From assembly GCA_964252035.1 (NCBI GenBank), contig CAXUOO010000113.1: a stretch of 54,943 nt of DNA; one strand, given 5' to 3'. The stretch is from Podarcis erhardii. Lineage: Eukaryota. Shown one piece after another: positions 6,493 through 54,943 of the stretch (the stretch's first letter is position 1; each line of letters opens with the position of its first letter). The position numbers were made by a program, and so were the translations under genes. A model generated the notes under the pieces. It was not told the DNA's origin. It saw only the letters and a program-made list of their open reading frames with translations, and searched no databases.

Positions 6493-6526
<34 letters not shown>

Positions 6527-12867: not shown

Positions 12868-12900
<33 letters not shown>

Positions 12901-12905
12901 GTATA
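12868..12905. repeat. (TA)n microsatellite
   Basis: Direct reading. Confidence 0.95.
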
Positions 12906-13506: not shown

Positions 13507-13542
13507 TATACATATATATACAATATATATATATATATATAT
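13507..13542. repeat. (TA)n microsatellite
   Basis: Direct reading. Confidence 0.9.
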
Positions 13543-13547
13543 TTTGT

Positions 13548-18646: not shown

Positions 18647-18744
18647 GACTACAAACATGATTACTAACCGGAAAAATTCGAAAATGATATATAAGGGAAG
18701 TTTGATGGTTGCTGTTGGAGGCATCTTATTGCTGGCACTTATAG
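18647..18744 (+). CDS. Candidate exon encoding a hydrophobic (signal-anchor/TM-like) segment
   Basis: Acceptor catgctcacag| and donor ATAG|GTACGC bound TTNMITNRKNSKMIYKGSLMVAVGGILLLALI. Confidence 0.3.
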
Positions 18745-23167: not shown

Positions 23168-23355
23168 GTTCTGTTGGTACAGCAAGATAGCGGCAACTGA
23201 TGACAATTGTGCTCTTACACAATTTTTTTCGAAACGATTGTCCGTGCAAGATCCTCCTGCTAAAAATTTTGTCGGTGCAGCAGGATAGCGCCAACTGGAT
23301 GACAACCGTGCTATTGCCACCATCTGTACGGAAACAATTGTCGGTGCAAGCTCTG
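23168..23355. repeat. Diverged two-copy tandem duplication (~98-100 bp unit)
   Basis: TGTTGGTACAGCAAGATAGCGGCAACTGATGACAATTGTGCT...GAAACGATTGTCCGTGCAAG at 23172 versus TGTCGGTGCAGCAGGATAGCGCCAACTGGATGACAACCGTGCT...GAAACAATTGTCGGTGCAAG at 23270. Confidence 0.8.
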
Positions 23356-24229
23356 TTTTGCTCATACTTCACATCATCAAGTAAGATTGTAATTATACAT
23401 GTAGAGCATCATGTCTAGTAAACTAATCTCTTTGTGGACGTTGAAGTGTGGACATTTGGACGTCTTCATATTCGCATTTGGAGACGTATGAGTGACTCAT
23501 GAAAATTTTCAACAACCCGTCACATCGTGGAGTACAATAAATATAGAGGTATGGGCTTGAATTACAGCGTGATTCTCTGTTAGTAGCGATCATAGTAGTG
23601 AGGCGTGCCAACCTTCTTCGTTGTTCCTCTTTATTGAATTGTGCTGCTTAGTGTCACACGTTTGAACTACTTAGAAACACATATATGAAAAGTAAGTCTC
23701 CAAGTTGCTCACGGTTTTTCGCAATCGCGAGACATATATGCTTATAGTGCATGGTACATCAATAGCCACAATTGTGGGCCAAAGAATTACACTGTATATT
23801 TACATGTATACATATGTAGGTTCAAGTGCTTGAAAAAACATCATGCAGCTCTTTTCGTACATGGGCGTTTATTGAATAGTTGTGCTTACTGATGTCGCCA
23901 CCTACGTCATGATTTCTTTTACAATAAACGACTTCATAAACGGTCGTAATCGAACTAGAAACATGATTGCGCTTTTCTTGCTTATGACACAGATTGAAGG
24001 GCGCAATAGACCAAACTGAGCTGGAGGGACAAGAACCACCAGAGAAGTCGAAGCAACGGTTTTTACATGCAAAACTTTGAATTTTCATTCAGGAATTGTT
24101 TGAAACCGAATTAAAATTAAAGGGACTAGTGGCGGATACTAGGAGTTTTCCTTATTTTGAAAGATATCAGCGCGACAACCACGCCGGTCTGTTTCATAAT
24201 CGCCCCTTGCTCAGTGACGAGAAAGTAGT

Positions 24230-27200
24230 TTTTGCAAGCCGGCGTTCAGTTTGACAGTTTAAGCAGCAAATTTGACTGTCAAACGAGTTGCCATGAGCAG
24301 ACAGAGGTGCTGCTGCAATCGGGTAGTTACAAGGGTTGCACAACAGCAATTTCAAACGTTTGCATTGTATAAAAGAATACGTTGTATTAGGTAGAGGCCA
24401 AACAATCGTGTAGCTGCGCATGGAGGTTACTCATCTCTACTCATTTGTGAGCGGACCTTTGAACTTAAATCAGCAGGTGAGCCGTGCAGCAGGGTCTCAA
24501 TAGTAAATATATCTGTGAAGTCATTACACAGCAGGAATTACTTCGCGTTACGAAGTAACTTTGAATCAAATTGTATACATCTTTATTACGATTATCCTGG
24601 TAAAGTTTGTATGCTAAAAAACATAGCGCTCAGGTACGGTTCAATATTTTTTTTAATCTCGCGTTACGTCCTCTTCAGGCTGCAAATCTGAATAATTTTT
24701 TAAAGGCTTGAGCCGTGCAGCATATTTTCGTTGTTTTTGGGTGTTTGTTAAGAAGCGCAAAACAATTTTTGAAGGCTCGTTCTAAACACCGAAAGGATTT
24801 TATGAGGTGAAAGCCGAAACTTTTTATTTATTTGTGCATGGTTCAATTTGTATGTCAGACTTCATTGTAGCGCTATGTAGAATGACATAGCACATTAGCC
24901 CCAAAGATCGCGAGGTCGAAGGCCCGCTACTATCAAGTAGTGAGAAGTGCACCAAGTTTCCGATGCTAGCGGTGTCTGTGTAGTCTCGTACAACAGCGAC
25001 TTTGAGACTGAGTAGATTGTATTACAAGAAAAAAAGCGGTGTATAATTCTTTGCATAACCTTTCTAATAGACTGTGTTTATCTGCCAGCAACTTGTTAGG
25101 CAGTAATATTATATCGTGTGGTGCATTATGTCCACTGCCTTGTTGAAGACATATCCAAGGTGACGAGCTGCGCCGGGTTTGATGTTTGCTGTATGTGTGA
25201 AGGATTGTGCAGCAGCACCTTAGTAAAGATTATTTTAAGTAAATAGAGTGCATTTATCAAAGCCAAATTTCTTCGTATTTTTGCTCGTTTTTCAGCAGAC
25301 TTCATTCAGTGCAGGTTTCAAAGTTGACGTTGGAAAAGTTTTAGATTTCTCAGAGCGCGTGCAGAGAGCGCTATTCAAGCTTTATTGAAACACTGTGATT
25401 CGTGCACCAGCAGAATTTATGAAAGATTGCACCGAAGCAACTTCAATGGCTCGCGTTGAGTAGGAGATAAATTTTGCTACACCGAACCCAGATGCTCAAC
25501 AACAGTGCGTGATCTGATCAGTTGCGTGTGGTTACAACCGAAGACAAAGCTATTATAAAGAATTATTTTTCTCCGAGCCGCAGCACCTCTATTGCAGGCC
25601 ATGAGGACTATTGTATACTTCAACGAAGTTAGCGGTGCAGTAAATTTCGGTTATCTGTGGACAGTTTCACAGCAACAACCGCAGAAGCTTGGGCTCAAAC
25701 ACATTAGTTAGTAGATCAAATAAGACAGCATATGGTATATCAAAAAGTGCATTATTTAAAAGGGTTTGGTTTTTTTTTTTTCGATCAGCATCAGAGCAAA
25801 GAGAAAGTATTTATCCATTTGGCTCGTTACTCGATCTGCGGGTTGTGCGGTCGATAGTAATCAGAGAGAGTACTTAATCATGGCTCGTTCTGCGGGCTGT
25901 GCGCTCGAATGTAAATTCTCAGAAAGTGAGACGCGCAACACATATATGGACACCCATGCACTCATGAAAGTTTACATAGCAGCAATTTCGACGGCTCAAA
26001 CTGTAAACTACACATTCTGCGTTACATGGAATCAATACGCTTTATATCATGCATTACTTGGCTAGTTGTCTTTTATCACAAGTGAAGACAACATCACAAT
26101 GCACTAAACGTACTGGTCAGTCAAGTTGCATTACCTTCATTTCAGGCTGCGCGGCCGAATTTGTTTATGTTAGGAAGATGAGCATGCAACATATTTTCAA
26201 GCAAAAAAGTGTCTGTGAAGGGTTTGCACAGCTGCCATTTTTACCTTTTTTGTTGTCAAATAGATGTACTGCTCTACATGGAAGTCGGAGTGCTATAGCA
26301 GCGCGTGTTGTGACTGCTTGGCTTGCTTACATATAGCTACAGCGGAAGGTATGAGTAATTATTCTCAATTTATCCCTCGCTTTTTGCAAGCCGCGCTTTT
26401 AAATCACTATTTCACGATAAGCCGCGCAACTAGTTTTCGGTGCCCGAATTAACTCTGAATGGTAGCACAGCAACAATTGTATAGGCTCGGGTCGAAAAGT
26501 CTGTTCCTTGTAGTTCAAAGACGACAGCCTTTGATAAATCAGTATGTTAATCAAATAGTATCGTTGGTTGATTTGAAGATTTTGCATTAGACTAGAGCTG
26601 CAAAACTTATTCTTACGGGGCGCTCTATGTACTGTGCGTTGTGCGGCCGGCCGTGTATTTTCAGAAAATAAGCCGCGAATTACATTTTGACCACCCCCAT
26701 ATCTGTGGAAGGTTGCACCGCAACAACCTCAAAGCGTCACATTGAAAAGTAACTACACTGCGGCACGGAAGTCGGATGCTGTACAACAGTGCATGATCTG
26801 GCTAATTGAATGTGGTTACAAGTGAACAGAGCACTAAGATAAAGTAGATATATTCTTTCCTTGCGCCGCAGCACGTCCATTGCAGGCTGTGCGGTCGAGT
26901 GTATAATTTTAAAATAAAAGGACGCGCAGCACATATTTGAACACCGCGTAATTAGCAGTTTCAAGGACTTGCAGACTACCTATCATTTGTTACATTGAAA
27001 GCATATCCTCTATAACCAGTGCTTAAATCGACAAATTGTATGACTTCACAGGTGACTGCAACATTAGAATATACTGAAAGTCTTTTTATGCAAGTCGCTG
27101 AATCTGTTTTTCTGACTGCGTCGTTGAACATATGTTTAAAGCAGATGATCGTCTTGCACATTTTCAAGCATCATAGTGTCTCATGAGGGTTGCACAGCAG

Positions 27201-29988
27201 CAGTTTTAGAGGACCGCATTGCGAAAAAATTGTGTTACATGAATGTCAGCTCTCTTGTGGCCCCGCGTATTTGTGTTCTGTTTATATATAATCACACCAT
27301 AAGATGGCAAGCATTTTTTTCCACGATGCAGTAGATCTGGTGAAGGCTGCGCCGTCGAGTGTATACTTTTACAAGGTGATTTTTGCAGCAGGTTTCGGCG
27401 CTCAGAGTAGAGGATAATGGTTGCACATCAACGAGTTTACTGGGTCGCGTGAATGCTGTTCGCCTGGTAGTTCATGGAAAAGTCCGTTCGATATATCGTT
27501 GAGTGTTTTATTTAGGAATGTGTGATTCTTTGCATGCACAAAATTGGGCTCAGGAAAAAGACACTTCCCTTACAGCGCGTTACGTGTAATGCAGGCTGTT
27601 CTCTCAATTGTATACAATCAGGAAGTGAGCCATGCTACCAGTTTTCGTTTTAAGAGGTAAATGTGAACGATTGCACAAAACCAAATTTTTATAGGCGCTT
27701 GTCAAAAAGTTTATTGCCAGTAGTTCAAAAAAGACAGCTTTAGATAAATCAATAGGTAGACCCTATAGTGTGTTGTTCTTGAAAGTTTTTTGCACTCGAC
27801 TAGAGAGGGAATATCTATATATCTTACGGTGCGTTACACATGATGTGGGCTGTGCTGTAGAATGTATATACTCAGAAAGAGATTCGCCAAGTATATTCTC
27901 GAATATCGCCCAGTGTATGGAAGGCTGAAAGCAGCAATTTCAAAACGGCACACGTTAAATTTATCTATTGTGTTACACGGCAGTATAAATTGCTGCAGCA
28001 AACCCGTTCTTGACTGCATGATTGTGCCCACATATCATAACAGCATAAATATAAAGTACAAAAATTTTCATTCAAAAGGGAATACATTTTTTGCATGCTG
28101 CCGTCGAGTGTATATGGTCAGGAGGTGAGCCGGTAGCAGGTCTTCGATGCTCAAAGTAGTTGTGAACGGTTGCACAAGGACAGTTGTACAGATGGTATTT
28201 CATGGAAAGTACCTTCTGATGTATTAGTATTGTTTCCAGTTAGAAATATCTCTATGTTTGCAAACAAAGCATCGAATACAGGGTGTAACCTCAAGGCACG
28301 TTACACGTAGTGCAGCTTGTACGGCCGAATGTGTACTTTTAGGAAATTAGCAGATAAGCTTTTTCTCGAACGTCGCCGTATCTACAGAGCGATGCGCAAC
28401 CTCAGTTTCAAATATCAGATTGTACACAAGGTACATGTGCAAATTGGATACCCGCGATGTACAGCAGTACGTGAATTGACGACAAGTGAATACAACGCAA
28501 GAAAAAACTGGGAGTAATCCTCATCGAGTGACAGTCCCTTGATTTTAGGCTGCGCGGACAAATGTAAATTTTTACCCGATATGCATACAGCACATTTTCG
28601 AGCCTCAAAGTAATTACAAGGGGTTGCACTCCAGAATTTTCAAACGCTCCCGTTGCAAACTAGATATACTGTGCTACACGGAAGTCTGAAGTGCTACTGC
28701 AGCACGTCGGTTGACTGCATGATCTTGCTTACATAATATCACATCGTAGAATCACGTTTTCATGGTGAGTACGTTTTTGCAGGCTGGTTTGTCGAGTGGT
28801 GAGCCGTGTTGTAAACGTGGGTGCTCGAAGTACTTGTGAACGGTTGCACAACGACAACTGTACAATCTCGCATTGAGCCCAACTTACCTGCTAGTTCCTG
28901 GAAGATAGAATCTGAATATTAGTATATATTTCATTCAAGAGTGTATCAATGTTTGCAAGCACAGCATCGTAAGAAGTGTGAATCCGTACGGCGCGTTGCA
29001 CGTGGTGCAGACTGTTCGGCGGAATGAGCAGATTCAGGAAGTGAGTCGAGAAGAAGATTCCCAAACCTCGCCTTATCTATTAAGGTTGCATCAGTTTCAA
29101 TGTGTCAGATGGCAAAGTAGATCTACTGTGCTATCTGGTTACCCGCGATATACAGCAGTACATGAATCGACAATTTGTATGTTTTTCCAAACTGAATTCA
29201 AGACAAGGAGACACTAGGTTTTCTTCTCATCATGTCTCAGTTCCTTCATTCAGGCTGCGCGGCAAAATGTATACTTTGAGCAGCTGATCAAGCAGCATTT
29301 TTTCCAAGTATTAATTGCACCAGGAGCTGCACGTCTGCGAATTCAGAGGCGCCCATTGCAAACTAAATATATGTGTTACACATGATTCTGAAGTGCTATC
29401 GCAGCGCGTGCGCTCTCTGTGTAAATTTCCCTGCACATTACCAAGGCATAAAAATAAAGAACGAGTAGATTCTTTAAGGATGCAATAAAATTTTCACAGG
29501 CTGCGCCGTCAAGTGTATGTACGTAGGAGGTGAGCCGTGCAGCAGATTCCCGGTGCTCGATGTATATGTGAACGGATGCACAGCAACAACTGTACGACCT
29601 CGCACTGAACGCTATAATCCTGCTGCTTCATGGATGCAAGCTGTGATTTATCAGTATCTGTTTCATTTGGGATGTATCTATGTTTGCATTCACAGTCATC
29701 AAAAAGTGTGTATTCTTGCGGCGCGTTCCAACTGCAGGTTGTGCGGTCGAATGTGTATTTTTTGGAAGTGAGCCGGGATGATCTTTTCGAACATTCTTCG
29801 TATCTACGAAGGGTTGCACAGCATCGATTGTCAAGTGCTACATTATAAAGTAGATATACTGTGCTACTTAAATACCTATAAACATCTACAGCACTTCATG
29901 TTTGGAAATATTGTGATATTCATAAGCGACGACAACACAAGCTTAAAGTAGGAGTATTTACTTTTCACTAAGCCGCGAAACTCTCATT
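24230..29988. repeat. Left diverged monomeric/trimeric layer of the satellite
   Basis: Monomer heads near 25890, 26143, 26386, 26635, 26883, 27112, 27345, 27593, 27848, 28094, 28313, 28546, 28780, 29015, 29250, 29497 and 29735. Degeneracy increases leftwards. Confidence 0.85.
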
Positions 29989-32407
29989 TCAGGCTGTGCA
30001 ACCAAATGTACATCCTGACCATATGACGTGCAGCACATTGTCGCGCACAACAGTATTTTTTTAGGGCTGCATAGCAGCACATTCAAACGCTTTGTTTTCA
30101 ACCTAGACACACGGTGATACACGAAGTTAAGAACTCTATAGCAGCGCATGCTTTGAGTGTCTGATTATGCTTACTCAGCACAGCATAGAAATGATGTACG
30201 AGTTTTTTGCCTTAAAGTAGGAAAAATACTTCTCAGAGGCTTCTTCGTGGGCTGTACATTTCCAGGACGTAAGCTTCGCAGCCAGTATTTGGTGCCGAAC
30301 CTGTTTGTGGAAGTTTGCACAGCAACAACTGTATAACCTAGATTGAATTCTATTTATCTTATATTACATGGAAAATAGCATTTTATACACGTGTATGTAA
30401 ATCACTCAAGCATGTATATGTGTTCGCAAAAAAGCAATTTACTATAAAAAAGTGTTTTTTGTACGGAGCGTCGAATATAGTGCAGGCTAGGCCATCGATT
30501 GTGTATATGATCAGAAAGGGAGCCACGCAAGAGGGTTTCTGTGTCTGAGGCATCTATGCACAAATGATCGGCAGTTTTACAGCCTCGGTATGAAAGCCTA
30601 TAGACATTGATGACAGCATTTGACACAGCAGAACGTGAACCTTTTGGTAGCGACTGTCTGTGTGTGTGAAATTGCAGCGTGAGATTTACGAGAAAGCGTT
30701 GATTTTCACGGTGCGTTACTAGTAGTGCGAGTTGTGCGGTCGAATGCGCTTTTTAGAAAGTGAATCAGAGGACAAAATCCGTATTCATGAAGAGCTGCAC
30801 AGCAGCATTTTCAAGGCTTCCCATTGCAATGTATTTGTAGTGTGCTACACGGAATTCAAACGTGTTATAGCAGCTCGCATTTGCTAATTGCTTGATTGTG
30901 CCCACGTATAATCACAGCTCAGCAATGAAGTACGAGTATGGTACTTTACAATAAATTTTGTTTTCTTTCAGGCTGCTGTATCGACTGTATACTTCTAGAA
31001 AGTGAGGTTTGCATCAATGTTTTGGTGCTCGAAGTATTTGTGAACGTTTTCACGTGAAAACTTGCATTGGCTTGCGCTGAACTCTGGCTATATGGTAATG
31101 GAAGATCGCTTCAGTATAACAGTATATGTTTCATTCAAAACTGTATTTACGTTTGCAAGCATAGCATCAAAAGAATTGTGTATCGGTATGGCGCGCTTTA
31201 CGTAGATCAGACTGTATGTTCAAATGAGTATATTCAGGAAGTGAGCCGAGAAGCATATCTTCGTACGTCGCCGTATATACGGAGGGTTGCACAGCATCAG
31301 CTTCAAGTGTCAGATTGTAAACAACATATGCTGTGCTACTTGGTAACCAGCAACATACAGCATTACATGGTTTGGAATATTTTATGTTTGCAGAGTTGAA
31401 TAAAGTACAAAGAGGAACTAAGAGTGCTTCTCATCAGGCTGGATCACTTTCGTTTCATGGTGTGCGACAAAATATATGTTTTGAACGGATAAGCGTGCAG
31501 CAATTTCCAATTTTTTAAGTGTTTGTATGGGGATGCACTTCAGCAATTTCAACCGCTCCCATTGCAAATTAGGACTATTGTGTCGTGCGCAAGTCAGAGA
31601 CGTACAGCAGCGCGTGCTTCAGCTGCGTGGCTGAAGTTACATATTTTCACATTATAAGGTTGAAACTCACGATGCAATACGTGTTTTGCAGGCTGCTCCA
31701 TCGAGTGTACAATCTGTAGAAGCAAGCTTTGTAGCAGGGTTTCGGCTGTGGATGTATCGTTGATCAGACGCACCGTAACAATGGTGTAGGCTCCCTTCAA
31801 TCACTGTCCTTCTGATGGTTCCTGGAGGAGACGGCACCTAATATATCAACTTTTGTTTCAAACATGTATTTGTATGTGGTTGCATCAAAACAAATGTGTA
31901 TTCTTACGGTGCGGTACACGTAGTGCAAAGCGTAGGTTCGGATGTATATGTCCAGCACAAGCATATTTTTGATTTTATTTATGAAAGATTGGACAGCAAT
32001 CTCGAAGTGTCACATTGCAAAGTAGATATACTGTGCCATGTGGATGTCAGATGATAAAAAAACAGAGTCTGCTTTGAGTACTCGAATATGTGTACAAGTG
32101 AACCCATACTAGAATGTAGTAGAAGTGACTTTTCTCACGCCGCAGCAGCTTCATTGCAGACTGTGCGATCCAGTGTGTATTCTCAGAACGTGAGCCACGC
32201 AACACGTCCTTGACATCGTCGTACTTATGGAAGGTTGCACAGCAGGAGTCTCAAGAGATTGCCTCGCATAGTAGATTTACTGCGTCACATACAATCCATA
32301 TGCACTAGAGCAGTGCATGAATCAACTAGTTGTCTGTTTTGATCAAAAAATACACACCACTATAACAAACTAAGACGAAGGCTCTTTCAAGTGGCATTAC
32401 TTTCATT
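29989..32407. repeat. Older, diverged copy of the 10-monomer HOR unit
   Basis: Colinear with the HOR unit monomer by monomer (e.g. 30483 corresponds to 32905, 31925 to 34328). Clearly more diverged than the core copies; identity rises near 32290-32350. Confidence 0.85.
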
Positions 32408-35400
32408 CAGGCTGCGTTTTTGATTGTATATTTTGAGCGAATGATAGTCTAGCACGTTTTCGAGCGTCACAGTCTCAGAGGAGAGTTGTCCAGCAGTAAT
32501 TTTAGACGCGCAAACTAGATGTATCGTGCTATGCGAATGTCAGAAGTGCTATAGCAGCGCTTGCTCTGACTGCCTGGTTGTGCTAACGTATATCCATACC
32601 ATGAGAATGAGCTGCCAGTTTTTCTTTCTCAAATGCAATATGTCTTTTGCATGCTGCGCCGTCGGCCTATATTCTAAAGCATTGAGCCGTGCATAGCAGA
32701 TTTTCGGTGCACGAATTCTCTGTGAACGCTTACAAAGCAACAACTGTGTAAGCACTGCTGCAAACTATGTATCTGATATTCCGTCGAAAGTACCTATTTA
32801 TATACAAGTACGTAGATGATTCAAGAATGTCTACGTGTTTGCAAACACAGAAGTTTACTTACAAAAAGTGTTTTTCGTACGGGAAGAGGTCGTCAAATAA
32901 ACTGCAGGCTGTGTGTCATCGAATCTGTATATGACCAGGAAGTGAGCCATGCAGCGGGGTTTCCCTGTTCAAGAAATTTATGAACGGATGCACAACAGCA
33001 GTTGTAGAGCCTTGGGATGAAAATTATATAGCTCATAGTCATTGATGACAGCACTTGATATAGCAGAACGCTAATCGCATAGTAGTGAGTGTCTGTGTGT
33101 GTTTGAAACTGCAGCGTGAGATTAGAGAAAACGCGTGGATTTTCATGGCGCGTTACTAATAATGGGAGTAGTGCGGCCGAATGCACAGTTTTGGAAAGGG
33201 GTTCAGAAAACCAAAGCCGTATTTATGAAGGTCTGCAAGGCAGCATTTTCAAGGCGTCCCATTGCAATATAGGTAGAGTGTGTTCCACGGGATTCAAGCG
33301 TGTTACAGCAGCGCGCGTTTGCTGATTGCTTGATTGTGCCCACGTGTAAACACAGCTCAATAATGAAGTACGAGTATTGTTCTTTACAATGAACTTCGTA
33401 TACTCTCAGGCTGCTTTATCGAATGTATACTGCTAAAAATGAGCCTTGCATCAAAGTTTCGGTGCTTGAAGTATTTGTAAACATTTGCAGGGGAATTCTT
33501 GCCTTGGCGTGCATTGAACTCTGGTTATCTGATAGTTCATATAAATAGCATCTGGTGTATCAGTATATGAATCATACAAAACTGTATTTACGTTTGCAAG
33601 CATAGCATTGAAAGAATTGTGTACCGGTATGGAGCGCTAAATGTAAATCAAACTGGACGGTCGCGTATCTTTGTACGTCGCATATATACGGAGGGTTGCG
33701 CAGCATTAGCTTCAAGTATCAGATTGTAAACAACATATGCTGTGCTATTTGAGTACCAGCAATATACAGCTTATACGGTTAGACAAGTTGTATGTTTTGA
33801 ATGAAACAGTAGGAAAAGCTGAAAGTGCTTCTCATCAGACTGGATTACATTCATCTCGGGCTGCGGGACCAAATGCATATTCCTAACAGAAATGAATGAA
33901 GAAAATTTTGAGTTTCAACATGTTTTCACGGGATGCACTTCAGAAATTTCAGACGCTCTTTTCGCAAGCTAGGTCTACTTTTCTCATAGGTATTAGAACA
34001 GCGCATGCTTAGTTCTGCATCTCGGAGGTTACACATCCGAACAGCGTGAGAATGAAACGTACGATGAAATACGATATTTTTCAGGCTGTTCCGTGGAGTG
34101 TACATTCGCAGGAAGCCAGCCTTGGAGCATGGTGTCGTTCGTCGATGTATTTTCGATTGGCTGTATAGCAACAATTGTATAGGCTCGCTTTGAGCACTGT
34201 TTATCTGGTAGCTCATGGAGGGGATGGCATCGTATATATTACTACTTGTTTCATCTAAAATTGTATATGTTTCTGCAAGCAAAACATCAAAAAGAGCGTG
34301 TACTCTTACGGTGCCTTATGCGTAGTGGAAAGTGTGCGATCGGATGAGTAAATCCAGCACAAGCATATGTTTGATTATAATTGTGGAAGATTGAACAGCA
34401 ATCTCGAAGTGTCACATTGCAAAGAAGTTAACTGTGTCACCTGGATGTCAGATGCTTGAACAAAGTGCCTGTTTTGACTAACTGAATATGCTTACAAGTG
34501 AACCGGGTACTAAGGTGTAAAGCAGAAGTAGTTTTCTTCACGTCGCAGCATGTTCATTGCAGACTCTGCGATCCATTGTGTATTCTCAGGACGTGAGCTG
34601 CTCAGCACGTCTGTGACTCCGCGGTACTTGAGAAAGTTGCACAGCAGGAGTTTCAAGGGTTGCCTTGCATAGTAGATATACTGAGTTACATACAAGCCAT
34701 ACGCATTAGAGCAGTGCATGAATCAACTAATTGTCTCTTTTGATTAAGAAATACACACCACTATAACAAACTAAGACGAAGGCTCTTTCAAGTGGCATTA
34801 CTTTCATTCAGGCTGCGTTTTTGATTGTATATTTTGTGCAAATGATAGTCTAGCACGTTTTCGAGCTTCACAGTCTCAGAGGAGAGTTGTCCAGCAGTAA
34901 TTGTAGACGCGCAAACTAGATGTATCGTGCTATGCGAATGTCAGAAGTGCTATAGCAGCGCTTGCTCTGACTGCCTGGTTGTGCTAACGTATATCCATAC
35001 CATGAGAATGAGCTGCCAGTTTTTCTTTCGCAAATGCAATATGTCTTTTGCATGCTGCGCCGTCGGCCTATATTCTAAAGCATTGAGCCGTGCATAGCAG
35101 ATTTTCGGTGCACGAATTCTCTGTGAACGCTTACAAAGCAACAACTGTGTAAGCACTGCTGCAAACTATGTATCTGGTATTCCGTGGAAGGTACCACCTT
35201 ATATACAAGTACGTAGATCATTCAAGAATGTCTACGTGTTTGCAAACACAGAAGTTTACTAACAAAAAAGTGTTTTTCGAACGGGAAGAGGGCGTCAACT
35301 AAGCTGCAGGCTGTGTGCCGTCGAATCTGTCTATGACCAGCAAGTGAGCCATGCAGCGGGGTTTCCCTGTTCAAGAAATTTATGAACGGATGCACAACAG

Positions 35401-44400: not shown

Positions 44401-47400
44401 AAGTGGCATTACTTTCATTCAGGCTGCGTTTTTGATTGTATATTTTGTGCGAATGATAGTCTAGCACGTTTTCGAGCTTCACAGTCTCAGAGGAGAGTTG
44501 TCCAGCAGTAATTGTAGACGCGCAAACTAGATGTATCGAGCTATGCGAATGTCAGAAGTACTAAAGCAGCGCTTGCTCTGACTGCCTGGTTGTGCTAACA
44601 TATATCCATACCATGAGAATGAGCTGCCAGTTTTTCTTTCTCAAATGCAATATGTCTTTTGCATGCTGCGCCGTCGGCCTATATTCTAAAGCATTGAGCC
44701 GTGCATAGCAGATTTTCGGTGCACGAATTCTCTGTGAACGCTTACAAAGCAACAACTGTGTAAGCACTGCTGCAAACTATGTATCTGGTATTCCGTCGAA
44801 AGTACCTATTTATATACAAGTACGTAGATGATTCAAGAATGTCTACGTGTTTGCAAACACAGAAGTTTACTTACAAAAAGTGTTTTTCGTACGGGAAGAG
44901 GTCGTCAAATAAACTGCAGGCTGTGTGCCGTCGAATCTGTCTATGACCAGGAAGTGAGCCATGCAGCGGGGTTTCCCTGTTCAAGAAATTTATGAACGGA
45001 TGCACAACAGCAGTTGTAGAGCCTTGGGATGAAAACTATATAGCTTATAGTCATTGATGACAGCACTTGATATAGCAGAACGCTAATCGCTTAGTAGTGA
45101 GTGTCTGTGTGTGTTTGAAATTGCAGCGTGAGATTAGAGAGAACGCGTGGATTTTCATGGCGCGTTACTAATAATGGGAGTTGTGCGGCCGAATGCACAA
45201 TTTTAGAAAGGGGTTCAGAAAATCAAAGCCGTATTTATGAAGGTCTGCAAGGCAGCATTTTCAAGGCGTCCCATTGCAATATAGGTAGAGTGCGTTCCAC
45301 GGGATTCAAGCGTGTTACAGCAGCGCGCGTCTGCTGATTGCTTGATTGTGCCCACGTGTAATCACAGCTCAATAATGAAGTACGAGTATTGTTCTTTACA
45401 ATGAACTTCGTATACTCTCAGGCTGCTTTATCGAATGTATACTGCTAGAAAATGAGCCTTGCATCAAAGTTTCGGTGCTTGAAGTATTTGTAAACATTTG
45501 CAGGGGAATTCTTGCATTGGCGTGCATTGAACTCTGGTTATCTGATAGTTCATATAAATAGCATCTGGTGTATCAGTATATGAATCATACAAAACTGTAT
45601 TTACGTTTGCAAGCATAGCATTGAAAGAATTGTGTACCGGTATGGAGCGCTAAATGTAAATCAAACTGGACGGTCGCGTATCTTTGTACGTCGCATATAT
45701 ACGGAGGGTTGCGCAGCATTAGCTTCAAGTATCAGATTGTAAACAACATATGCTGTGCTATTTGAGTACCAGCAATATACAGCTTATACGGTTAGACAAG
45801 TTGTATGTTTTGAATGAAACAGTAGGAAAAGCTGAAAGACTGGATTACATTCATCTCGGGCTGCGGGACCAAATGCATATTCCTAACAGAAATGAATGAA
45901 GAAAATTTTTAAGTTTCAACATGTTTGCACGGAATGCAGTTCAGAACTTTCAGACGCTCTTTTCGCAAGCTAGGTCTACTTTTCTCAAAGGTATTAGAGC
46001 AGCGCATGCTTAGTTCTGCATCTCGGAGGTTACACATCCGAACAGCGTGAGAATGAAACGTACGATGAAATACGATATTTTGCAGGCTGTTCCGTGGAGT
46101 GTACATTCGCAGGAAGCCAGCTTTGGAGCATGGTGTCGTTCGCCGATGTATTTTCGATTGGCTGTATAGCAACAATTGTATAGGCTCGCTTTGAGCACTG
46201 TTTATCTGGTAGCTCATGGAGGGGATGGCATCGTATATATTACTACTTGTTTCATCTAAAATTGTATATGTTTCTGCAAGCAAACATCAAAAAGAGCGTG
46301 TACTCTTACGGCGCCTTATGCGTAGTGGAAAGTGTGCGATCGGATGAGTAAATCCAGCACAAGCATATGTTTGATTATAATTGTGGAAGATTGAACAGCA
46401 ATCTCGAAGTGTCACATTGCAAAGAAGTTAACTGTGTCACCTGGATGTCAGATGCTTGAACAAAGTGCCTGTTTTGACTAATTGAATATGCTTATAAGTG
46501 AACCGGGTACTAAGGTGTAAAGCAGAAGTAGTTTTCTTCACGTCGCAGCATGTTCATTGCAGACTCTGCGATCCATTGTGTATTCTCAGAACGTGAGCCA
46601 CGCAGCACGTCTGTGACTCCGCGGTACTTAAGAAAGGTTGCACAGCAGGAGTTTTAAGGGTGCCTTGCATAGTAGATATACTGAGTTACATACAAGCCAT
46701 ACGCATTAGAGCAGTGCATGAATCAACTAATTGTCTCTTTTGATTAAGAAATACACACCACTATAACAAACTAAGACGAAGGCTCTTTTAAGTGGCATTA
46801 CTTTCATTCAGGCTGCGTTTTTGATTGTATATTTTGTGCAAATGATAGTCTAGCACGTTTTCGAGCTTCACAGTCTCAGAGGAGAGTTGTCCAGCAGTAA
46901 TTTTAGACGCGCAAACTAGATGTATCGAGCTATGCGAATGTCAGAAGTACTAAAGCAGCGCTTGCTCTGACTGCCTGGTTGTGCTAACGTATATCCATAC
47001 CATGAGAATGAGCTGCCAGTTTTTCTTTCGCAAATGCAATATGTCTTTTGCATGCTGCGCCGTCGGCCTATATTCTAAAGCATTGAGCCGTGCATAGCAG
47101 ATTTTCGGTGCACGAATTCTCTGTGAACGCTTACAAAGCAACAACTGTGTAAGCACTGCTGCAAACTATGTATCTGGTATTCCGTGGAAAGTACCTATTT
47201 ATATACAAGTACGTAGATGATTCAAGAATGTCTACGTGTTTGCAAACACAGAAGTTTACTTACAAAAAGTGTTTTTCGTACGGGAAGAGGTCGTCAAATA
47301 AACTGCAGGCTGTGTGCCGTCGAATCTGTCTATGACCAGGAAGTGAGCCATGCAGCGGGGTTTCCCTGTTCAAGAAATTTATGAACGGATGCACAACAGC

Positions 47401-50400
47401 AGTTGTAGAGCCTTGGGATGAAAATTATATAGCTTATAGTCATTGATGACAGCACTTGATATAGCAGAACGCTAATCGCTTAGTAGTGAGTGTCTGTGTG
47501 TGTTTGAAATTGCAGCGTGAGATTAGAGAGAACGCGTGGATTTTCATGGCGCGTTACTAATAATGGGAGTTGTGCGGCCGAATGCACAGTTTTAGAAAGG
47601 GTTCAGAAAATCAAAGCCGTATTTATGAAGGTCTGCAAGGCAGCATTTTCAAGGCGTCCCATTGCAATATAGGTAGAGTGCGTTCCACGGGATTCAAGCG
47701 TGTTACAGCAGCGCGCGTCTGCTGATTGCTTGATTGTGCCCACGTGTAATCACAGCTCAATAATGAAGTACGAGTATTGTTCTTTACAATGAACTTCGTA
47801 TACTCTCAGGCTGCTTTATCGAATGTATACTGCTAGAAAATGAGCCTTGCATCAAAGTTTCGGTGCTTGAAGTATTTGTAAACATTTGCAGGGGAATTCT
47901 TGCATTGGCGTGCATTGAACTCTGGTTATCTGATAGTTCATATAAATAGCATCTGGTGTATCAGTATATGAATCATACAAAACTGTATTTACGTTTGCAA
48001 GCATAGCATTGAAAGAATTGTGTACCGGTATGGAGCGCTAAATGTAAATCAAACTGGACGGTCGCGTATCTTTGTACGTCGCATATATACGGAGGGTTGC
48101 GCAGCATTAGCTTCAAGTATCAGATTGTAAACAACATATGCTGTGCTATTTGAGTACCAGCAATATACAGCTTATACGGTTAGACAAGTTGTATGTTTTG
48201 AATGAAACAGTAGGAAAAGCTGAAAGACTGGATTACATTCATCTCGGGCTGCGGGACCAAATGCATATTCCTAACAGAAATGAATGAAGAAAATTTTTAA
48301 GTTTCAACATGTTTGCACGGAATGCAGTTCAGAACTTTCAGACGCTCTTTTCGCAAGCTAGGTCTACTTTTCTCAAAGGTATTAGAGCAGCGCATGCTTA
48401 GTTCTGCATCTCGGAGGTTACACATCCGAACAGCGTGAGAATGAAACGTACGATGAAATACGATATTTTGCAGGCTGTTCCGTGGAGTGTACATTCGCAG
48501 GAAGCCAGCCTTGGAGCATGGTGTCGTTCGTCGATGTATTTTCGATTGGCTGTATAGCAACAATTGTATAGGCTCGCTTTGAGCACTGTTTATCTGGTAG
48601 CTCATGGAGGGGATGGCATCGTATATATTACTACTTGTTTCATCTAAAATTGTATATGTTTCTGCAAGCAAAACATCAAAAAGAGCGTGTACTCTTACGG
48701 CGCCTTATGCGTAGTGGAAAGTGTGCGATCGGATGAGTAAATCCAGCTCAAGCATATGTTTGATTATAATTGTGGAAGATTGAACAGCAATCTCGAAGTG
48801 TCACATTGCAAAGAAGTTAACTGTGTCACCTGGATGTCAGATGCTTGAACAAAGTGCCTGTTTTGACTAATTGAATATGCTTACAAGTGAACCGGGTACT
48901 AAGGTGTAAAGCAGAAGTAGTTTTCTTCACGTCGCAGCATGTTCATTGCAGACTCTGCGATCCATTGTGTATTCTCAGGACGTGAGCTGCTCAGCACGTC
49001 TGTGACTCCGCGGTACTTAAGAAAGGTTGCACAGCAGGAGTTTCAAGGGTTGCCTTGCATAGTAGATATACTGAGTTACATACAAGCCATACGCATTAGA
49101 GCAGTGCATGAATCAACTAATTGTATCTTTTGATTAAGAAATACACACCACTATAACAAACTAAGACGAAGGCTCTTTCAAGTGGCATTACTTTCATTCA
49201 GGCTGCGTTTTTGATTGTATATTTTGTGCAAATGATAGTCTAGCACGTTTTCGAGCTTCACAGTCTCAGAGGAGAGTTGTCCAGCAGTAATTGTAGACGC
49301 GCAAACTAGATGTATCGAGCTATGCGAATGTCAGAAGTACTAAAGCAGCGCTTGCTCTGACTGCCTGGTTGTGCTAACATATATCCATACCATGAGAATG
49401 AGCTGCCAGTTTTTCTTTCGCAAATGCAATATGTCTTTTGCATGCTGCGCCGTCGGCCTATATTCTAAAGCATTGAGCCGTGCATAGCAGATTTTCGGTG
49501 CACGAATTCTCTGTGAACGCTTACAAAGCAACAACTGTGTAAGCACTGCTGCAAACTATGTATCTGGTATTCCGTGGAAAGTACCTATTTATATACAAGT
49601 ACGTAGATGATTCAAGAATGTCTACGCGTTTGCAAACACAGAAGTTTACTTACAAAAAAGTGTTTTTCGTACGGGAAGAGGTCGTCAAATAAACTGCAGG
49701 CTGTGTGCCGTCGAATCTGTCTATGACCAGGAAGTGAGCCATGCAGCGGGGTTTCCCTGTTCAAGAAATTTATGAACGGATGCACAACAGCAGTTGTAGA
49801 GCCTTGGGATGAAAACTATATAGCTCATAGTCATTGATGACAGCACTTGATATAGCAGAACGCTAATCGTTTAGTAGTGAGTGTCTGGGTGTGTTTGAAA
49901 CTGCAGCGTGAGATTAGTGAAAACGCGTGGATTTTCATGGCGCGTTACTAGTAATGGGAGTTGTGCGGTCGAATGCACAGTTTTAGAAAGGGGGTTCAGA
50001 AAACCAAAGCCGTATTTATGAAGGTCTGCAAAGCAGCATTTCCCAGGCGTCCCATTGCAATATAGGTATAATGTGTTCCACGGGATTCAAGCGTGTTACA
50101 GCAGCGCGCGTCTGCTGATTGCTTGATTGTGCCCACGTGTAATCACAGCTCAATAATGAAGTACGAGTATTGTTCTTTACGATGAACTTCGTATACTCTC
50201 AGGCTGCTTTATCGAACGTATACTGTAAAAAATTCAGCCTTGCATCAGCGTTTCGGTGCTTGAAGTATTTGTGAACATTTGCAGGGGAATTCTTGCATTG
50301 GCGTGCGTTGAACTCTGGTTATCTGATAGTTCATATAAACTAGCATCTGATATATCAGTATATGAATCATACAAAACTGTATTTTCGTTTGCAAGCATAG

Positions 50401-53130
50401 CATTGAAAGAATTGTGTACCGGTATGGAGCGCTAAATGTGAATCAAACTGGACGGTCGCGTATCTTTGTACGTCGCATATATACGGAGGGTTGCGCAGCA
50501 TTAGCTTCAAGTATCAGATTGTAAACAACATATGCTGAGCTATTTGAGTACCAGCAATATACAGCTTATACGGTTAGACAAGTTGTATGTTTTGAATGAA
50601 ACAGTAGGAAAAGCTGAAAGTGCTTCTCATCAGACTGGATTACATTCATCTCGGGCTGCGGGACCAAATGCATATTCCTAACAGAAATGAATGAAGAAAA
50701 TTTTTAAGTTTCAACATGTTTGCACGGTATGCAGTTCAGAAATTTCAGACGCTCTTTTCGCAAGCTAGGTCTACTTTTCTCAAAGGTATTAGAGCAGCGC
50801 ATGCTTAGTTCTGCATCTCGGAGGTTACACATCCGAACAGCGTGAGAATGAAACGTACGATGAAATACGATATTTTTCAGGCTGTTCCGTGGAGTGTACA
50901 TTCGCAGGAAGCCAGCCTTGGAGCATGGTGTCCGTTCGCCGATGTATTTTCGATTGGCTGTATAGCAACAATTGTATAGGCTCGCTTTGAGCACTGTTTA
51001 TCTGGTAGCTCATGGAGGGGATGGCATCGTATATATTACTACTTGTTTCATCTAAAATTGTATATGTTTCTGCAAGCAAAACATCAAAAAGAGCGTGTAC
51101 TCTTACGGCGCCTTATGCGTAGTGGAAAGTGTGCGATCGGACGAGTAAATCCAGCACAAGCATATGTTTGATTATAATTGTGGAAGATTGAACAGCAATC
51201 TCGAAGTGTCACATTGCAAAGAAGTTAACTGTGTCACCTGGATGTCAGATGCTTGAACAAAGTGCCTGTTTTGACTAATTGAATATGCTTACAAGTGAAC
51301 CGGGTACTAAGGTGTAAAGCAGAAGTAGTTTTCTTCACGTCGCAGCATGTTCATTGCAGACTCTGCGATCCATTGTGTATTCTCAGGACGTGAGCTGCTC
51401 AGCACGTCTGTGACTCCGCGGTACTTAAGAAAGGTTGCACAGCAGGAGTTTCAAGGGTTGCCTTGCATAGTAGATATACTGAGTTACATACAAGCCATAC
51501 GCATTAGAGCAGTGCATGAATCAACTAATTGTCTCTTTTGATTAAGAAATACACACCACTATAACAAACTAAGACGAAGGCTCTTTCAAGTGGCATTACT
51601 TTCATTCAGGCTGCGTTTTTGATTGTATATTTTGTGCGAATGATAGTCTAGCACGTTTTCGAGCTTCACAGTCTCAGAGGAGAGTTGTCCAGCAGTAATT
51701 TTAGACGCGCAAACTAGATGTATCGTGCTATGCGAATGTCAGAAGTGCTATAGCAGCGCTTGCTCTGACTGCCTGGTTGTGCTAACGTATATCCATACCA
51801 TGAGAATGAGCTGCCAGTTTTTCTTTCGCAAATGCAATATGTCTTTTGCATGCTGCGCCGTCGGCCTATATTCTAAAGCATTGAGCCGTGCATAGCAGAT
51901 TTTCGGTGCACGAATTCTCTGTGAACGCTTACAAAGCAACAACTGTGTAAGCACTGCTGCAAACTATGTATCTGGTATTCCGTGGAAAGTACCTATTTAT
52001 ATACAAGTACGTAGATGATTCAAGAATGTCTACGTGTTTGCAAACACAGAAGTTTACTTACAAAAAGTGTTTTTCGTACGGGAAGAGGTCGTCAAATAAA
52101 CTGCAGGCTGTGTGCCGTCGAATCTGTCTATGACCAGGAAGTGAGCCATGCAGCGGGGTTTCCCTGTTCAAGAAATTTATGAACGGATGCACAACAGCAG
52201 TTGTAGAGCCTTGGGACGAAAACTATATAGCTTATAGTCATTGATGACAGCACTTGATATAGCAGAACGCTAATCGCATAGTAGTGAGTGTCTGTGTGTG
52301 TTTGAAATTGCAGCATGAGATTAGAGAGAACGCGTGGATTTTCATGGCGCGTTACTAATAATGGGAGTTGTGCGGTCGAATGCACAGTTTTAGAAAGGGG
52401 GTTCAGAAAACCAAAGCCGTATTTATGAAGGTCTGCAAAGCAGCATTTCCCAGGCGTCCCATTGCAATATAGGTATAATGTGTTCCACGGGATTCAAGCG
52501 TGTTACAGCAGCGCGCGTCTGCTGATTGCTTGATTGTGCCCACGTGTAATCACAGCTCAATAATAAAGTACGAGTATTGTTCTTTACGATGAACTTCGTA
52601 TACTCTCAGGCTGCTTTATCGAACGTATACTGTAAACAATTCAGCCTTGCATCAAAGTTTCGGTGCTTGAAGTATTTGTAAACATTTGCAGGGGAATTCT
52701 TGCATTGGCGTGCATTGAACTCTGGTTATCTGATAGTTCATATAAATAGCATCTGGTGTATCAGTATATGAATCATACAAAACTGTATTTAAGTTTGCAA
52801 GCATAGCATTAAAGGAATTGTGTACCGGTATGGAGCGCTAAATGTAAATCAAACTGGACGGTCGCGTATCTTTGTACGTCACGTATATACGGAGGGTTGC
52901 GCAGCATTAGCTTCAAGTATCAGATTGTAAACAACATATGCTGTGCTATTTGAATACCAGCAATATACAGCTTATATGGTTAGATAAGTTGTATGTTTTG
53001 AATGAAACAGTAGGAGAAACTAGGATTGCTTCTCATCAGGCTGGATTACATTCATCTTGGGCTGCGCGACCAAATGCAATTTCTAACAGAAATGAATGAA
53101 GAAAATTTTTGAGTTTCAACATGTTTGCAC
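32408..53130. repeat. Homogeneous ~2.4-kb higher-order repeat: 8 complete copies plus 1 partial
   Basis: Unit starts (CAGGCTGCGTTTTTGATTG) at 32408, 34809, 37213, 39616, 42023, 44420, 46809, 49199 and 51607, giving unit lengths 2401, 2404, 2403, 2407, 2397, 2389, 2390 and 2408. The ORF track independently shows the same 68-aa ORF nine times at this spacing. Confidence 0.98.
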
Positions 53131-54943
53131 GGGCTGCACTTAAGCAATTTTTGACGCTCGCATTGCAAGTCCACTGTATTACATGGATATCAGAGGTGCT
53201 ATAGCAGCGTGTGCTTCGACTGCGCGACTGTGCTTACAAAATCATCACAGCATAAGATTGAAATAAGAGTATTTTTTCAACAATGCAATACGTCGTTGCA
53301 CACTGGTCTATCGGATTTATACTTTCGGAACGCAAGCGTTGCAGCAGGGGCTCGGTGCTTAAAGTGTCTGTGAAGGTTGCACAGCAAAAATGGTACTGAC
53401 TCGCGTTGAACACTTTTTTTCGTGTAGTTCATGGTTGCTAGCATGCGTATATGCTTCATTCAGGCGTGTATGTTTGCAAGCACAGCGTCAAAATAAATGT
53501 GTATTTTGTAAGGCGCGTTACACGTGCAGGCTGTGCGGTCGAATGTGTATTTCCAGAAAGTTAATTAAGAATTTTTTTTCGATCATCGCCGTGTTTATGG
53601 CGGGTTGCACAGCATCAATTTTTTTTTTCAAGCGTCACATTTTAAAGTAGATATGTTGTGCTATTTGGATACCTAAGAAATTCTACAGCAGTACATGGTT
53701 TGGATTATTATAAATATTTCATAGGCGACGACAACACAAGCATAAACTAAGATTCCTTTCCTTTAAACTGCCACACTTTCATTTCTCATTAAGCTGAGGT
53801 ACTTTCATATCAGGCTGCGCAGCCAAATGCATATTCTGATCATATGACGTACAGCATATTTTCGAGCCCCAAAGTGTCTGCAAGGAATTGCAGACCAGCA
53901 ATATCCGAGGCTCCCATTGCAAACCAGATACATTGTGCTACGCTGAAGTCAGAGGTGCTATAACAGCTGAATAGGCTTGCGTTGAGCACTTCTCATCTGG
54001 TAGTTCGTGGAGAGGATGGCAACTGATGTAGGAAATATTTGTCTTAGCCAACAATGTATACGTGTTTGCAAGCAAAGCATCAAAAAATGTGTACGCTTAC
54101 GGCGCAATACATGTAGTGCAGGCTGTGCGATCGAATGTGGAACATTAGCATATGAGGCTTGAAGAATATTTTCGAACGTCGACGCATCTATTCGTGTTGT
54201 ACAAATGAAAATGCTACGCTGCAAAGTAGATACACTGTGCTACTTGGAAATCCACGTTATACAGCAGTACATGAATTGACAAATCATATGTTTTCAAAGT
54301 AAGTACAATACAAACATAAATTAGGAGCACTTCTCATCAAGCCGTATCATTTTCATTTCAGGCTGGGCGAATAAATGTGTAGTTTGAGCAAATGAGCATT
54401 CAGCAGCTCTTCAAGCCCTAACGTGTTTGCATGGGGTGGCACAGCCGCAGTTGTAGAACGCTTCCCGTGAAAGCTAGGTATATTGTGCTATATGAAAGTC
54501 ACAGCCGCTATAGCAGCGTGTGGTTTGCCTACGTGACTGTGCTTACATATTGTCACAGCATAAAATAAAGTACGAGTTTTTTTTCAACGATGCGATGCGC
54601 TTTTTGCAAGTTGGTTATTTTAGTTCAAGTTCTCAAGAGGTGAGCCGTGCACCGGGTTTTTAATGCTTGACGTATCTTAACATGACCGGCTGCATAGCAA
54701 AAATTGCACTGGCTCGCGTTGAGCACTATGTACTTGGTAGTTCATGGATGCTAGCATCTGACTTATTGATATGTGTTTGGTTCAGGAGTGTGTATGATAG
54801 CAAGCACAGCATCAAGAAAGTGGTGTATCCGTACGGCGCGTTACACGGAGCAAGCTGTGCAGTCGAATGCGAATATTCAGAAAGTGAGCCATGAAGCATG
54901 TTTTCGAACACCGCCGTCTTTGTGGAAGGTTTCACAACAGCAA
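53131..54943. repeat. Right diverged layer of the satellite (XYZ trimers)
   Basis: HOR identity is lost inside monomer 7 of copy 9. Heads continue near 53290 (Y), 53528 (Z), 53812 (X/Y chimera), 54119 (Z), 54358 (X), 54606 (Y) and 54850. Confidence 0.85.

What the first reader, a model, noticed from the sequence alone, without database searches (positions are those of the whole stretch)
24230..54943. Layered satellite domain: homogeneous HOR core flanked on both sides by older diverged monomers
Seen: a ~21-kb near-identical core sits between two zones of the same monomer family, with the left zone decaying outwards. Established: a HOR core with monomeric flanking layers is the layout of primate alpha-satellite centromeres. 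Toxoplasma centromeres are not satellite-defined, although Toxoplasma has satellite families (e.g. sat350, the 529-bp repeat). Inference: this may be an undescribed satellite-based centromere or heterochromatin organiser in a protist. I do not recognise the monomer.
Basis: partly seen in the sequence, partly recalled or inferred. Interest (0 to 1): 0.8.

Follow-up and report, generated by a model that had tools for sequence, protein, structure and literature searches.

The report
Layered satellite array in a coccidian
A 30-kb-plus block of non-coding tandem DNA, built in age layers around a young core like a primate centromere, sits in the genome of a Toxoplasma-like parasite that was assembled together with a wall lizard; whether it is a centromere, a chromosome-end block or plain heterochromatin cannot be told from sequence.

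Summary
From 24,323 to the window end there is one head-to-tail, same-strand array of ~235-240-bp monomers, and none occurs before it. A 2.39-2.41-kb unit of ten mutually diverged monomers (31-62% alike) is repeated 8.7 times at 97.5-99.5% identity (about 32,280-53,160). One older copy of the same 10-mer (about 81%) lies to its left. Still older layers lie on both sides; they align with each other (66-69% over about 1 kb) and carry an older ~0.7-kb three-monomer period. There is no long ORF, Rfam family, tRNA, excess hairpin potential or telomere repeat.

The DNA is protist, not lizard. The window's left edge holds the first two exons of RNA polymerase I RPA1, whose nearest named relative is Toxoplasma gondii (56-57% identity). 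CpG is not depleted anywhere in the window. Scan notes on other pieces also report a coccidian co-assembled with a wall lizard.

Contig depth puts the core at about 6 times the neighbouring single-copy layer. The assembly is therefore not collapsed, and this higher-order repeat (HOR) is not a high-copy genome-wide satellite.

The centromere reading is untested (about 0.2). A heterochromatic satellite block at a subtelomere or pericentromere, homogenised by in-register unequal exchange, is the better bet. First readers noted two similar arrays on other pieces; I could not read them.

The parts
44..325 (-). RNA polymerase I largest subunit (RPA1), exon 2. The gene runs off the window start.
   Evidence: tblastn of T. 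gondii RPA1 (P0001) residues 101-194: 41% identity, E 3e-12.
1941..2294 (-). RPA1 exon 1, with the start codon at 2294. An intron of about 1.6 kb follows.
   Evidence: Pfam RNA_pol_Rpb1_1, E 8e-13. The best of 1.84 billion proteins is T. gondii RPA1, 57% identity, E 3e-36. tblastn gives 56% over 119 residues.
2295..24322 (.). 22-kb spacer with no recognisable gene, holding several (TA)n microsatellites.
   Evidence: No ORF over 184 aa. No Pfam hit except one below cut-off in 17 ORFs. No monomer hit. The T. gondii upstream neighbour (an ADH-like gene) is absent.
24323..25890 (+). Outermost, most decayed monomers: fragmentary, with gaps of 75-184 bp.
   Evidence: nhmmer hits are partial, E 5e-4 to 2e-26.
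25891..30381 (+). Old monomer layer. It includes an older period of about 674-730 bp (three monomers) at 28.1-29.9 kb, and part-collinear remnants of the 2.4-kb unit at 65-75% identity.
   Evidence: 28,148-29,133 aligns with 28,822-29,866 at 64.7% over 1,072 bp, E 1e-54.
30382..32280 (+). Older copy of the 10-monomer unit, with monomers in the same order and about 81% identity to the core.
   Evidence: Identity is 62-84% per 120-bp bin and rises to 94-99% from about 32,280.
32281..53160 (+). Homogeneous HOR core: 8.7 copies of a 2,389-2,408-bp unit of ten ~240-bp monomers.
   Evidence: Pairwise unit identity is 97.5-99.5%, with the inner units most alike. The monomer order 1-10 repeats without a break. 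Depth is about 6 times that of the neighbouring layer.
53161..54943 (+). Right-hand old layer, cut by the window end. It is collinear with the left old layer, not with the core.
   Evidence: 53,963-54,910 aligns with 28,854-29,793 at 66.5% over 965 bp, E 5e-58. 53,340-53,875 aligns with 29,538-30,054 at 69%, E 1e-59. Nearest-neighbour monomers agree.

Best explanation
This is a non-coding satellite DNA domain in the nuclear genome of a coccidian (Toxoplasma/Eimeria-grade) parasite that was co-assembled with a wall-lizard genome.

How it formed. An ancient array of ~240-bp monomers went through successive local amplifications. First came a three-monomer (~0.7 kb) period, now about 65-70% alike and lying on both sides. 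Then came a ten-monomer 2.4-kb unit, of which one old copy survives at about 81%. A recent burst then made 8-9 copies at 98-99%. Growth happens in the middle, by in-register unequal sister-chromatid exchange or gene conversion between 2.4-kb units, and this pushes older layers outward, where they decay.

Likely role. By analogy with Toxoplasma satellites, the block is most likely packaged as constitutive heterochromatin at a subtelomere or beside a centromere. It need not itself be the kinetochore-forming DNA.

Shown: the anatomy, the layering, the low copy number and the parasite origin. Inferred: the exchange mechanism, the chromatin state and the chromosomal position.
For: - Periodicity and HOR structure.
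- Unit identity is highest among inner units and lower at the array edges.
- There is an older 81% copy, and the flanks are symmetric and collinear with each other.
- There is no coding or RNA signal.
- Core depth is about 12.9 against 2 for the adjacent older copy in run X2, and 7-7.7 in X1 of the same sample. That matches the assembled 8.7 copies.
- In a second host label the core differs more (44 differences in 1,174 bp) than the older layer (7 in 621 bp). Its depth ratio is also lower, as expected for concerted evolution and copy-number change.
- One contig joins 29,798 to 31,272, a six-monomer skip.
- Parasite origin.
- Toxoplasma satellites sat350 and sat240 are subtelomeric, heterochromatic and made of highly variable monomers. 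The 529-bp repeat is a single-locus array on chromosome IV (PMC8092015), called centromeric in PMC9498087.
- T. gondii RPA1 lies about 95 kb from a scaffold end.
Against: - There is no chromatin, Hi-C or CenH3 data.
- The rest of the parasite genome could not be read, so the number and position of related arrays are unknown.
- The window holds no telomere repeat.
- The satellite lies on the 5' side of RPA1, whereas the near scaffold end in T. gondii is on the 3' side, and the T. gondii neighbour gene is absent. The synteny argument for a chromosome end is therefore weak.
- Contig word depth is only a rough proxy for copy number.
- Two loose ends in X2, at 30,781 and 35,408, lead to sequence that is not in the window, so close copies or variants exist elsewhere.
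Confidence: 0.6

Rival explanations
1. The HOR core is the kinetochore-forming regional centromere of one parasite chromosome. Each chromosome would carry its own HOR of the same monomer family, as in primate alpha satellite. CenH3 nucleosomes sit on the young core and the older layers form pericentromeric heterochromatin.
For: - The symmetric age layering around a young homogeneous core is the layout of primate centromeres.
- A locus-specific HOR fits chromosome-specific arrays.
- The region is gene-free for more than 52 kb.
- First-reader notes report two more large layered arrays on other pieces of the same assembly, at least one of them in coccidian-like DNA. These notes are unchecked.
- In Toxoplasma the chromosome IV centromere (2.20-2.23 Mb) and the single-locus 529-bp array lie on the same chromosome (PMC8092015), and PMC9498087 calls that repeat centromeric.
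Against: - Known coccidian (Toxoplasma) centromeres are short CenH3 peaks mapped by ChIP-on-chip, 20-30 kb on chromosome IV (PMC8092015).
- Only about 21 kb is homogeneous.
- There is no AT-rich or dyad-symmetry signature.
- No strongly conserved box stands out: the best 12-mer carries 1.3 bits per position against a mean of 0.76.
- Layering also arises in non-centromeric arrays.
Confidence: 0.22
2. The array is an interstitial tandem array with no chromosomal role. It would be a neutral by-product of replication slippage and unequal exchange, comparable to the Toxoplasma B1 or 529-bp arrays.
For: The array is low-copy and apparently single-locus. It has no conserved motif, no structure and no coding potential. 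Its copy number seems to differ between samples.
Against: The monomer family is old: monomers are only 31-62% alike, yet they still lie head-to-tail over more than 30 kb, with at least three rounds of amplification. Similar large arrays are reported elsewhere in the same assembly. Both points argue for a persistent class of region rather than a one-off event.
Confidence: 0.13
3. The satellite belongs to the lizard host, or the contig is a chimera or a collapsed mis-assembly.
For: The assembly is labelled as a lizard, and other windows carry lizard genes. Lacertids do have abundant satellites (PMC7397244).
Against: - CpG observed/expected is 0.86-0.99 in the gene, the spacer and every satellite layer. 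From my own knowledge, vertebrate bulk DNA is strongly CpG-depleted.
- GC content is uniform across the window.
- Independent short-read contigs of two samples reproduce the 30.0-32.4 kb layer without a mismatch, and the HOR at the expected depth.
- Where PMC7397244 gives a lacertid monomer size it is 187-199 bp; from memory the other families are about 140-200 bp, not 240 bp.
Confidence: 0.03

Closest known systems
Primate alpha-satellite centromere domains (HOR core with flanking older monomeric layers)
   Same: Both have head-to-tail monomers in a single orientation and a multi-monomer unit repeated at 98-99% identity. In both, the monomers within the unit are much more diverged, older layers lie on both sides and are related to each other, and homogeneity is highest in the middle.
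   Different: The monomer here is about 240 bp rather than 171 bp, with no sequence relation to alpha satellite. Monomers are far more diverged (31-62%). The core is only about 21 kb rather than megabases. No CENP-B-like box is seen. No evidence of CenH3 binding exists. The organism is an apicomplexan.
Toxoplasma gondii subtelomeric satellites sat350 and sat240 (PMC9498087; PMC8092015)
   Same: Both come from coccidian genomes and are long non-coding arrays of highly variable monomers in gene-poor regions. One Toxoplasma family has a 240-bp unit. Copy number varies between strains.
   Different: Sequence homology could not be tested, because no Toxoplasma satellite sequence was available to the tools. 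The Toxoplasma families occur at many chromosome ends, whereas this HOR is low-copy. HOR layering was not mentioned in the passages of those papers that I read.
Toxoplasma 529-bp repeat
   Same: It is a single-locus non-coding tandem array of tens of kb whose copy number changes between isolates. It lies on chromosome IV (PMC8092015), and PMC9498087 calls it centromeric.
   Different: It has a simple 529-bp unit in 85-205 copies, without a monomer/HOR hierarchy or age layers.
Lacertid lizard satellites (pLCS, pLHS, pGPS, HindIII, TaqI families; PMC7397244)
   Same: They are tandem satellites that occur in the host species of this assembly.
   Different: Where PMC7397244 gives a monomer size it is 187-199 bp; from memory the other families are about 140-200 bp. 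They make up a few percent of the genome in Iberolacerta (HindIII 5-10%, TaqI 2.5-5%). The present array has a non-vertebrate CpG signature and sits next to an apicomplexan gene.

Membership tests
Satellite DNA with higher-order repeat (HOR) organisation | Head-to-tail monomers of one family in a single orientation | tested here: met
   129-135 plus-strand nhmmer hits at about 240-bp spacing cover 88% of 24,323-54,943. No significant minus-strand hit was found.
Satellite DNA with higher-order repeat (HOR) organisation | A multi-monomer unit whose copies are much more alike than the monomers within it | tested here: met
   Units are 97.5-99.5% alike, against 31-62% for monomers. The monomer order 1-10 is repeated 8.7 times.
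Satellite DNA with higher-order repeat (HOR) organisation | High genomic copy number, i.e. a 'satellite' in the classical sense | tested here: not met
   Core depth is only about 6-7 times that of the adjacent single-copy layer. This is a low-copy, locus-specific array. The genome-wide count of the monomer family is not testable here.
Layered (age-gradient) centromere-type satellite domain | A young core flanked on both sides by older layers that are related to each other | tested here: met
   The right flank is collinear with the left flank at 66-69% identity, E 5e-58 and 1e-59. Identity steps down from 98% to 81%, then to 65-70%, and then to fragments.
Functional centromere | CenH3 (CENP-A) nucleosomes or kinetochore assembly on the sequence, one per chromosome | not testable with these tools
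   There is no chromatin or Hi-C data, and other contigs of the parasite cannot be read. Only unchecked first-reader notes of two further arrays exist.
Subtelomeric satellite (Toxoplasma type) | Position between the telomere repeat and the first euchromatic genes | tested here: inconclusive
   The window holds no TTTAGGG run, and the array runs off the window end. The T. gondii RPA1 orthologue lies about 95 kb from a scaffold end, but orientation and neighbours differ.
Subtelomeric satellite (Toxoplasma type) | Sequence homology to sat350 or sat240 | not testable with these tools
   No Toxoplasma satellite sequence could be fetched. The monomer HMM finds nothing in 21 kb around T. gondii RPA1.
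Apicomplexan (coccidian) nuclear DNA | Linked genes whose nearest relatives are apicomplexan, and a non-vertebrate dinucleotide signature | tested here: met
   The best RPA1 hit is T. gondii (57%), followed by Cryptosporidium and Colpodella. CpG observed/expected is 0.86-0.99 throughout.

The most novel reading that the evidence does not exclude
Coccidian parasites of this lineage have satellite-based regional centromeres. Each chromosome would carry its own higher-order repeat of a shared ~240-bp monomer family, growing from the middle as in primates. This would be a fourth centromere type within Apicomplexa, next to the AT-rich Plasmodium type, the unique-sequence Toxoplasma type and the dispersed Cryptosporidium type.
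Probability: 0.2. Interest if true: 0.75.

Novelty: new member of a known kind. Interest (0 to 1): 0.5.

Why it matters
Centromere DNA differs greatly among apicomplexans. Plasmodium uses short AT-rich elements and Toxoplasma has short single CenH3-bound regions, which as far as I recall are not repetitive. Cryptosporidium was reported in 2025-26 to have dispersed CenH3 sites (PMC13739221).

A coccidian with layered HOR arrays would either add a satellite-based type, or show that primate-like layering arises without centromere function. Either result bears on the question of whether layered expansion is a centromere-specific process.

On the practical side, the window shows that a sizeable parasite genome is hidden inside a lizard assembly. 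That matters to users of the assembly, and it offers free genomic data on a poorly sampled reptile parasite. The HOR could also serve as a sensitive, strain-resolving PCR target, much as the 529-bp repeat does for Toxoplasma.

Tried and rejected
- TRF with default and relaxed settings found neither the 2.4-kb period nor the 240-bp period. Plain base autocorrelation was not decisive.
- A first iterative HMM collapsed to 164 positions. I replaced it with explicit partition of the unit into ten monomers.
- A coding reading is rejected: no open frame over 184 aa on any strand, and under 100 aa inside the unit.
- An RNA-gene array is rejected: no Rfam family and no tRNA.
- A non-B DNA or dyad-symmetry signature is rejected: z = +0.64 against shuffles, and no short inverted repeats.
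- I tried to reach other contigs through spurious ORF products of the satellite. Nothing was found.
- I tried synteny through two Logan contigs of related parasites. Only 2.1-2.6 kb upstream of RPA1 is held, which is too short, and it has no monomer hit.
- Toxoplasma synteny: the upstream ADH-like gene is absent here.
- The first protein-word search with the RPA1 exon failed because of the tool's length window. The exhaustive search solved this.
- The Brooks et al. 2011 centromere paper is not held, so the position of the Toxoplasma centromere relative to RPA1 could not be checked.
- A lookup of our findings by sequence gave nothing.
Full report
**What is in the sequence.** Repeated 16-mers are almost absent up to 32 kb and fill 32-53 kb, with spacings of 2,388-2,408 bp. 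BLAST of one 2,404-bp unit against the window finds eight full copies and one 1.17-kb part copy at 96-98.5% identity. It also finds one further copy at 79% (30,382-32,789) and many weak collinear pieces at 64-77% on both sides. TRF misses all of this because the period exceeds its limits and the sub-repeat is too diverged.

**The monomer.** nhmmer of 300-bp pieces of a unit against the same unit gives significant off-diagonal matches, with E down to 1e-20. Their offsets cluster at about 240, 480, 700, 950, 1,170, 1,405, 1,650, 1,900 and 2,150 bp, which are multiples of about 236-240 bp. Cutting the unit at the implied phase gives ten monomers of 212-260 bp that are only 31-62% alike. They fall into two loose sub-types: monomers 1, 3, 6 and 10 against the rest.

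An HMM of these ten finds 129 head-to-tail plus-strand monomers from 24,323 to 54,942 and nothing before 24,323. A second HMM, built from 51 non-redundant monomers, covers 88% of that span and gives no significant minus-strand hit. The consensus is about 235 bp. Its best-kept stretches are the first about 26 positions and positions 80-94, but conservation there is modest, 1.0-1.3 bits against a mean of 0.76.

**Layers.** Units U1-U8 are 97.5-99.5% alike. The inner units are the most alike (99.1-99.5%) and the outer ones the least. The copy at 30,382 is about 81% alike over its first 1.9 kb, then rises to 94-99% from about 32,280, which is where the homogeneous core starts. On the right, identity falls abruptly from over 90% to about 60% at about 53,160.

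Left of the 81% copy, the monomers show an older period of about 674-730 bp, or three monomers. For example, 28,148-29,133 aligns with 28,822-29,866 at 64.7% over 1,072 bp, E 1e-54. The right flank is collinear with that left layer rather than with the core. 53,963-54,910 aligns with 28,854-29,793 at 66.5%, E 5e-58, and 53,340-53,875 aligns with 29,538-30,054 at 69%. The outermost 1.5 kb on the left is fragmentary.

A young 10-mer HOR has grown inside an older 10-mer layer, which itself lies inside a still older 3-mer layer.

**Not coding, not a known RNA.** No frame is open for more than 184 aa anywhere, or for 100 aa inside the unit. There is no Rfam family and no tRNA. Single-strand folding of three monomers is no better than shuffles (z = +0.64), and there are no short inverted repeats. 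No TTTAGGG run is present.

**Whose DNA it is.** Scan notes describe this assembly as a wall lizard, but several note coccidian pieces. I tested this on the window itself.

- An ORF at 1932-2405 on the minus strand carries Rpb1 domain 1. It is about as distant from human as from yeast polymerases.
- An exhaustive search of 1.84 billion proteins puts T. gondii RNA polymerase I RPA1 first (57% identity over 118 residues, E 3e-36). Unnamed Logan fragments, Cryptosporidium RPA1 and Colpodella follow.
- tblastn maps T. gondii residues 1-119 to 2294-1941 and residues 101-194 to 325-44, with an intron of about 1.6 kb between them.
- CpG observed/expected is 0.86-0.99 in the gene part, the spacer and every satellite layer, and GC content is uniform. 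From my own knowledge, vertebrate DNA is strongly CpG-depleted, so a lizard origin or a chimeric contig is unlikely.

The organism is a coccidian-grade parasite, not Toxoplasma itself, co-assembled with its host.

**Surroundings.** Between RPA1 and the array lie 22 kb with (TA)n microsatellites and no recognisable gene. In T. gondii an ADH-like gene sits 3.7 kb upstream of RPA1. It is absent here. T. gondii RPA1 lies about 95 kb from the end of a 1.95-Mb scaffold and about 75 kb from the end of a 1.26-Mb one. This is only a weak hint of a chromosome-end neighbourhood, since orientation and neighbours differ.

**Copy number and variation.** The unit is held, near-identical, by runs of two organism labels.

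- In run X2, contigs reproduce 30,001-32,377 without a single difference at word depth 2, and the core at 11.5-13.7. In X1, from the same sample, the core is at 7-7.7.
- The ratio of about 6 fits the 8.7 assembled copies, given 1-2.5% differences between copies. The array is therefore not collapsed, and this HOR is not a high-copy genome-wide satellite.
- In runs of the other label the ratio is lower, about 1-3. The core also differs more from the window (44 differences in 1,174 bp) than the older layer does (7 in 621 bp). This fits concerted evolution and copy-number change, but contig depth is a rough measure.
- One X2 contig joins 29,798 directly to 31,272, a skip of about six monomers. Two loose ends lead to sequence that is not in the window. 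Variants or further copies therefore exist.

**How it most likely works.** The anatomy fits repeated rounds of local amplification, followed by homogenisation through in-register unequal exchange or conversion between 2.4-kb units. These processes are most effective in the middle of the array, so the edges decay. This is inference from identity patterns, not observation.

For the chromosomal role I rely on the nearest studied relative. In Toxoplasma, long satellites of highly variable monomers (sat350, and a 240-bp family called sat240) are confined to gene-poor, H3K9me3-marked subtelomeres (PMC9498087). The 529-bp repeat is a single-locus array on chromosome IV whose copy number changes between isolates (PMC8092015), and PMC9498087 calls it centromeric. 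Centromeres there were mapped as single CenH3 ChIP-on-chip peaks, 20-30 kb on chromosome IV (PMC8092015). I therefore rank the readings as follows:

- a heterochromatic block at a subtelomere or pericentromere: 0.6;
- a kinetochore-forming satellite centromere: about 0.2;
- a neutral interstitial array: about 0.13;
- host DNA or an artefact: about 0.03.

**Novelty.** Satellites with HORs and age layers are a known kind. Satellites in coccidia are also known. I found no description of HOR layering in an apicomplexan in the papers searched. No sequence match was found for the monomer, but the searches available to me could not reach eukaryotic satellite databases. I file it as a new member of a known kind.

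Two more large layered arrays were noted by first readers on other pieces of this assembly (s1-241318, s1-224470). I could not read them. If they share this monomer and lie one per chromosome, the centromere reading would gain much weight.

Noticed in passing
window 1-2294 (minus strand): The first two exons of an apicomplexan RNA polymerase I RPA1 gene, separated by an intron of about 1.6 kb. The whole window is therefore parasite DNA inside an assembly labelled as a wall lizard.
   Followed up: yes
window 650-1550: There is strong 3-base periodicity inside the presumed RPA1 intron, as strong as in exon 1. No T. gondii RPA1 match falls there. It could be an unrecognised exon, a nested gene or a repeat.
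   Followed up: no
window 13,300-16,000: The plus strand is purine-rich (GC skew +0.24, AT skew +0.21). This gives long low-complexity Ser/Phe/Leu-rich open frames on the minus strand (184 aa at 13,336-13,887). These are probably non-coding polypyrimidine/polypurine tracts.
   Followed up: no
window 5,123-13,542: Six (TA)n microsatellites of 15-19 units are scattered through the gene-free spacer.
   Followed up: no
window 17,573-17,732: Two copies of a 56-bp sequence lie 104 bp apart at 95% identity. They are an isolated short direct repeat, unrelated to the satellite.
   Followed up: no
window 29,798 / 31,272, and 31,298 / 32,005: Short-read contigs of run X2 carry junctions that skip 1,473 bp (six monomers) and 706 bp (three monomers) within the older layers. 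These may be structural variants from unequal exchange in a mixed parasite population, or graph artefacts.
   Followed up: partly
L003 / L004 (T. gondii scaffolds KL998095.1, ML130747.1): In two T. gondii assemblies RPA1 is annotated as two genes: a 318-aa N-terminal product, and a 2,382-aa product that starts about 600 bp downstream. This is probably a split gene model.
   Followed up: no
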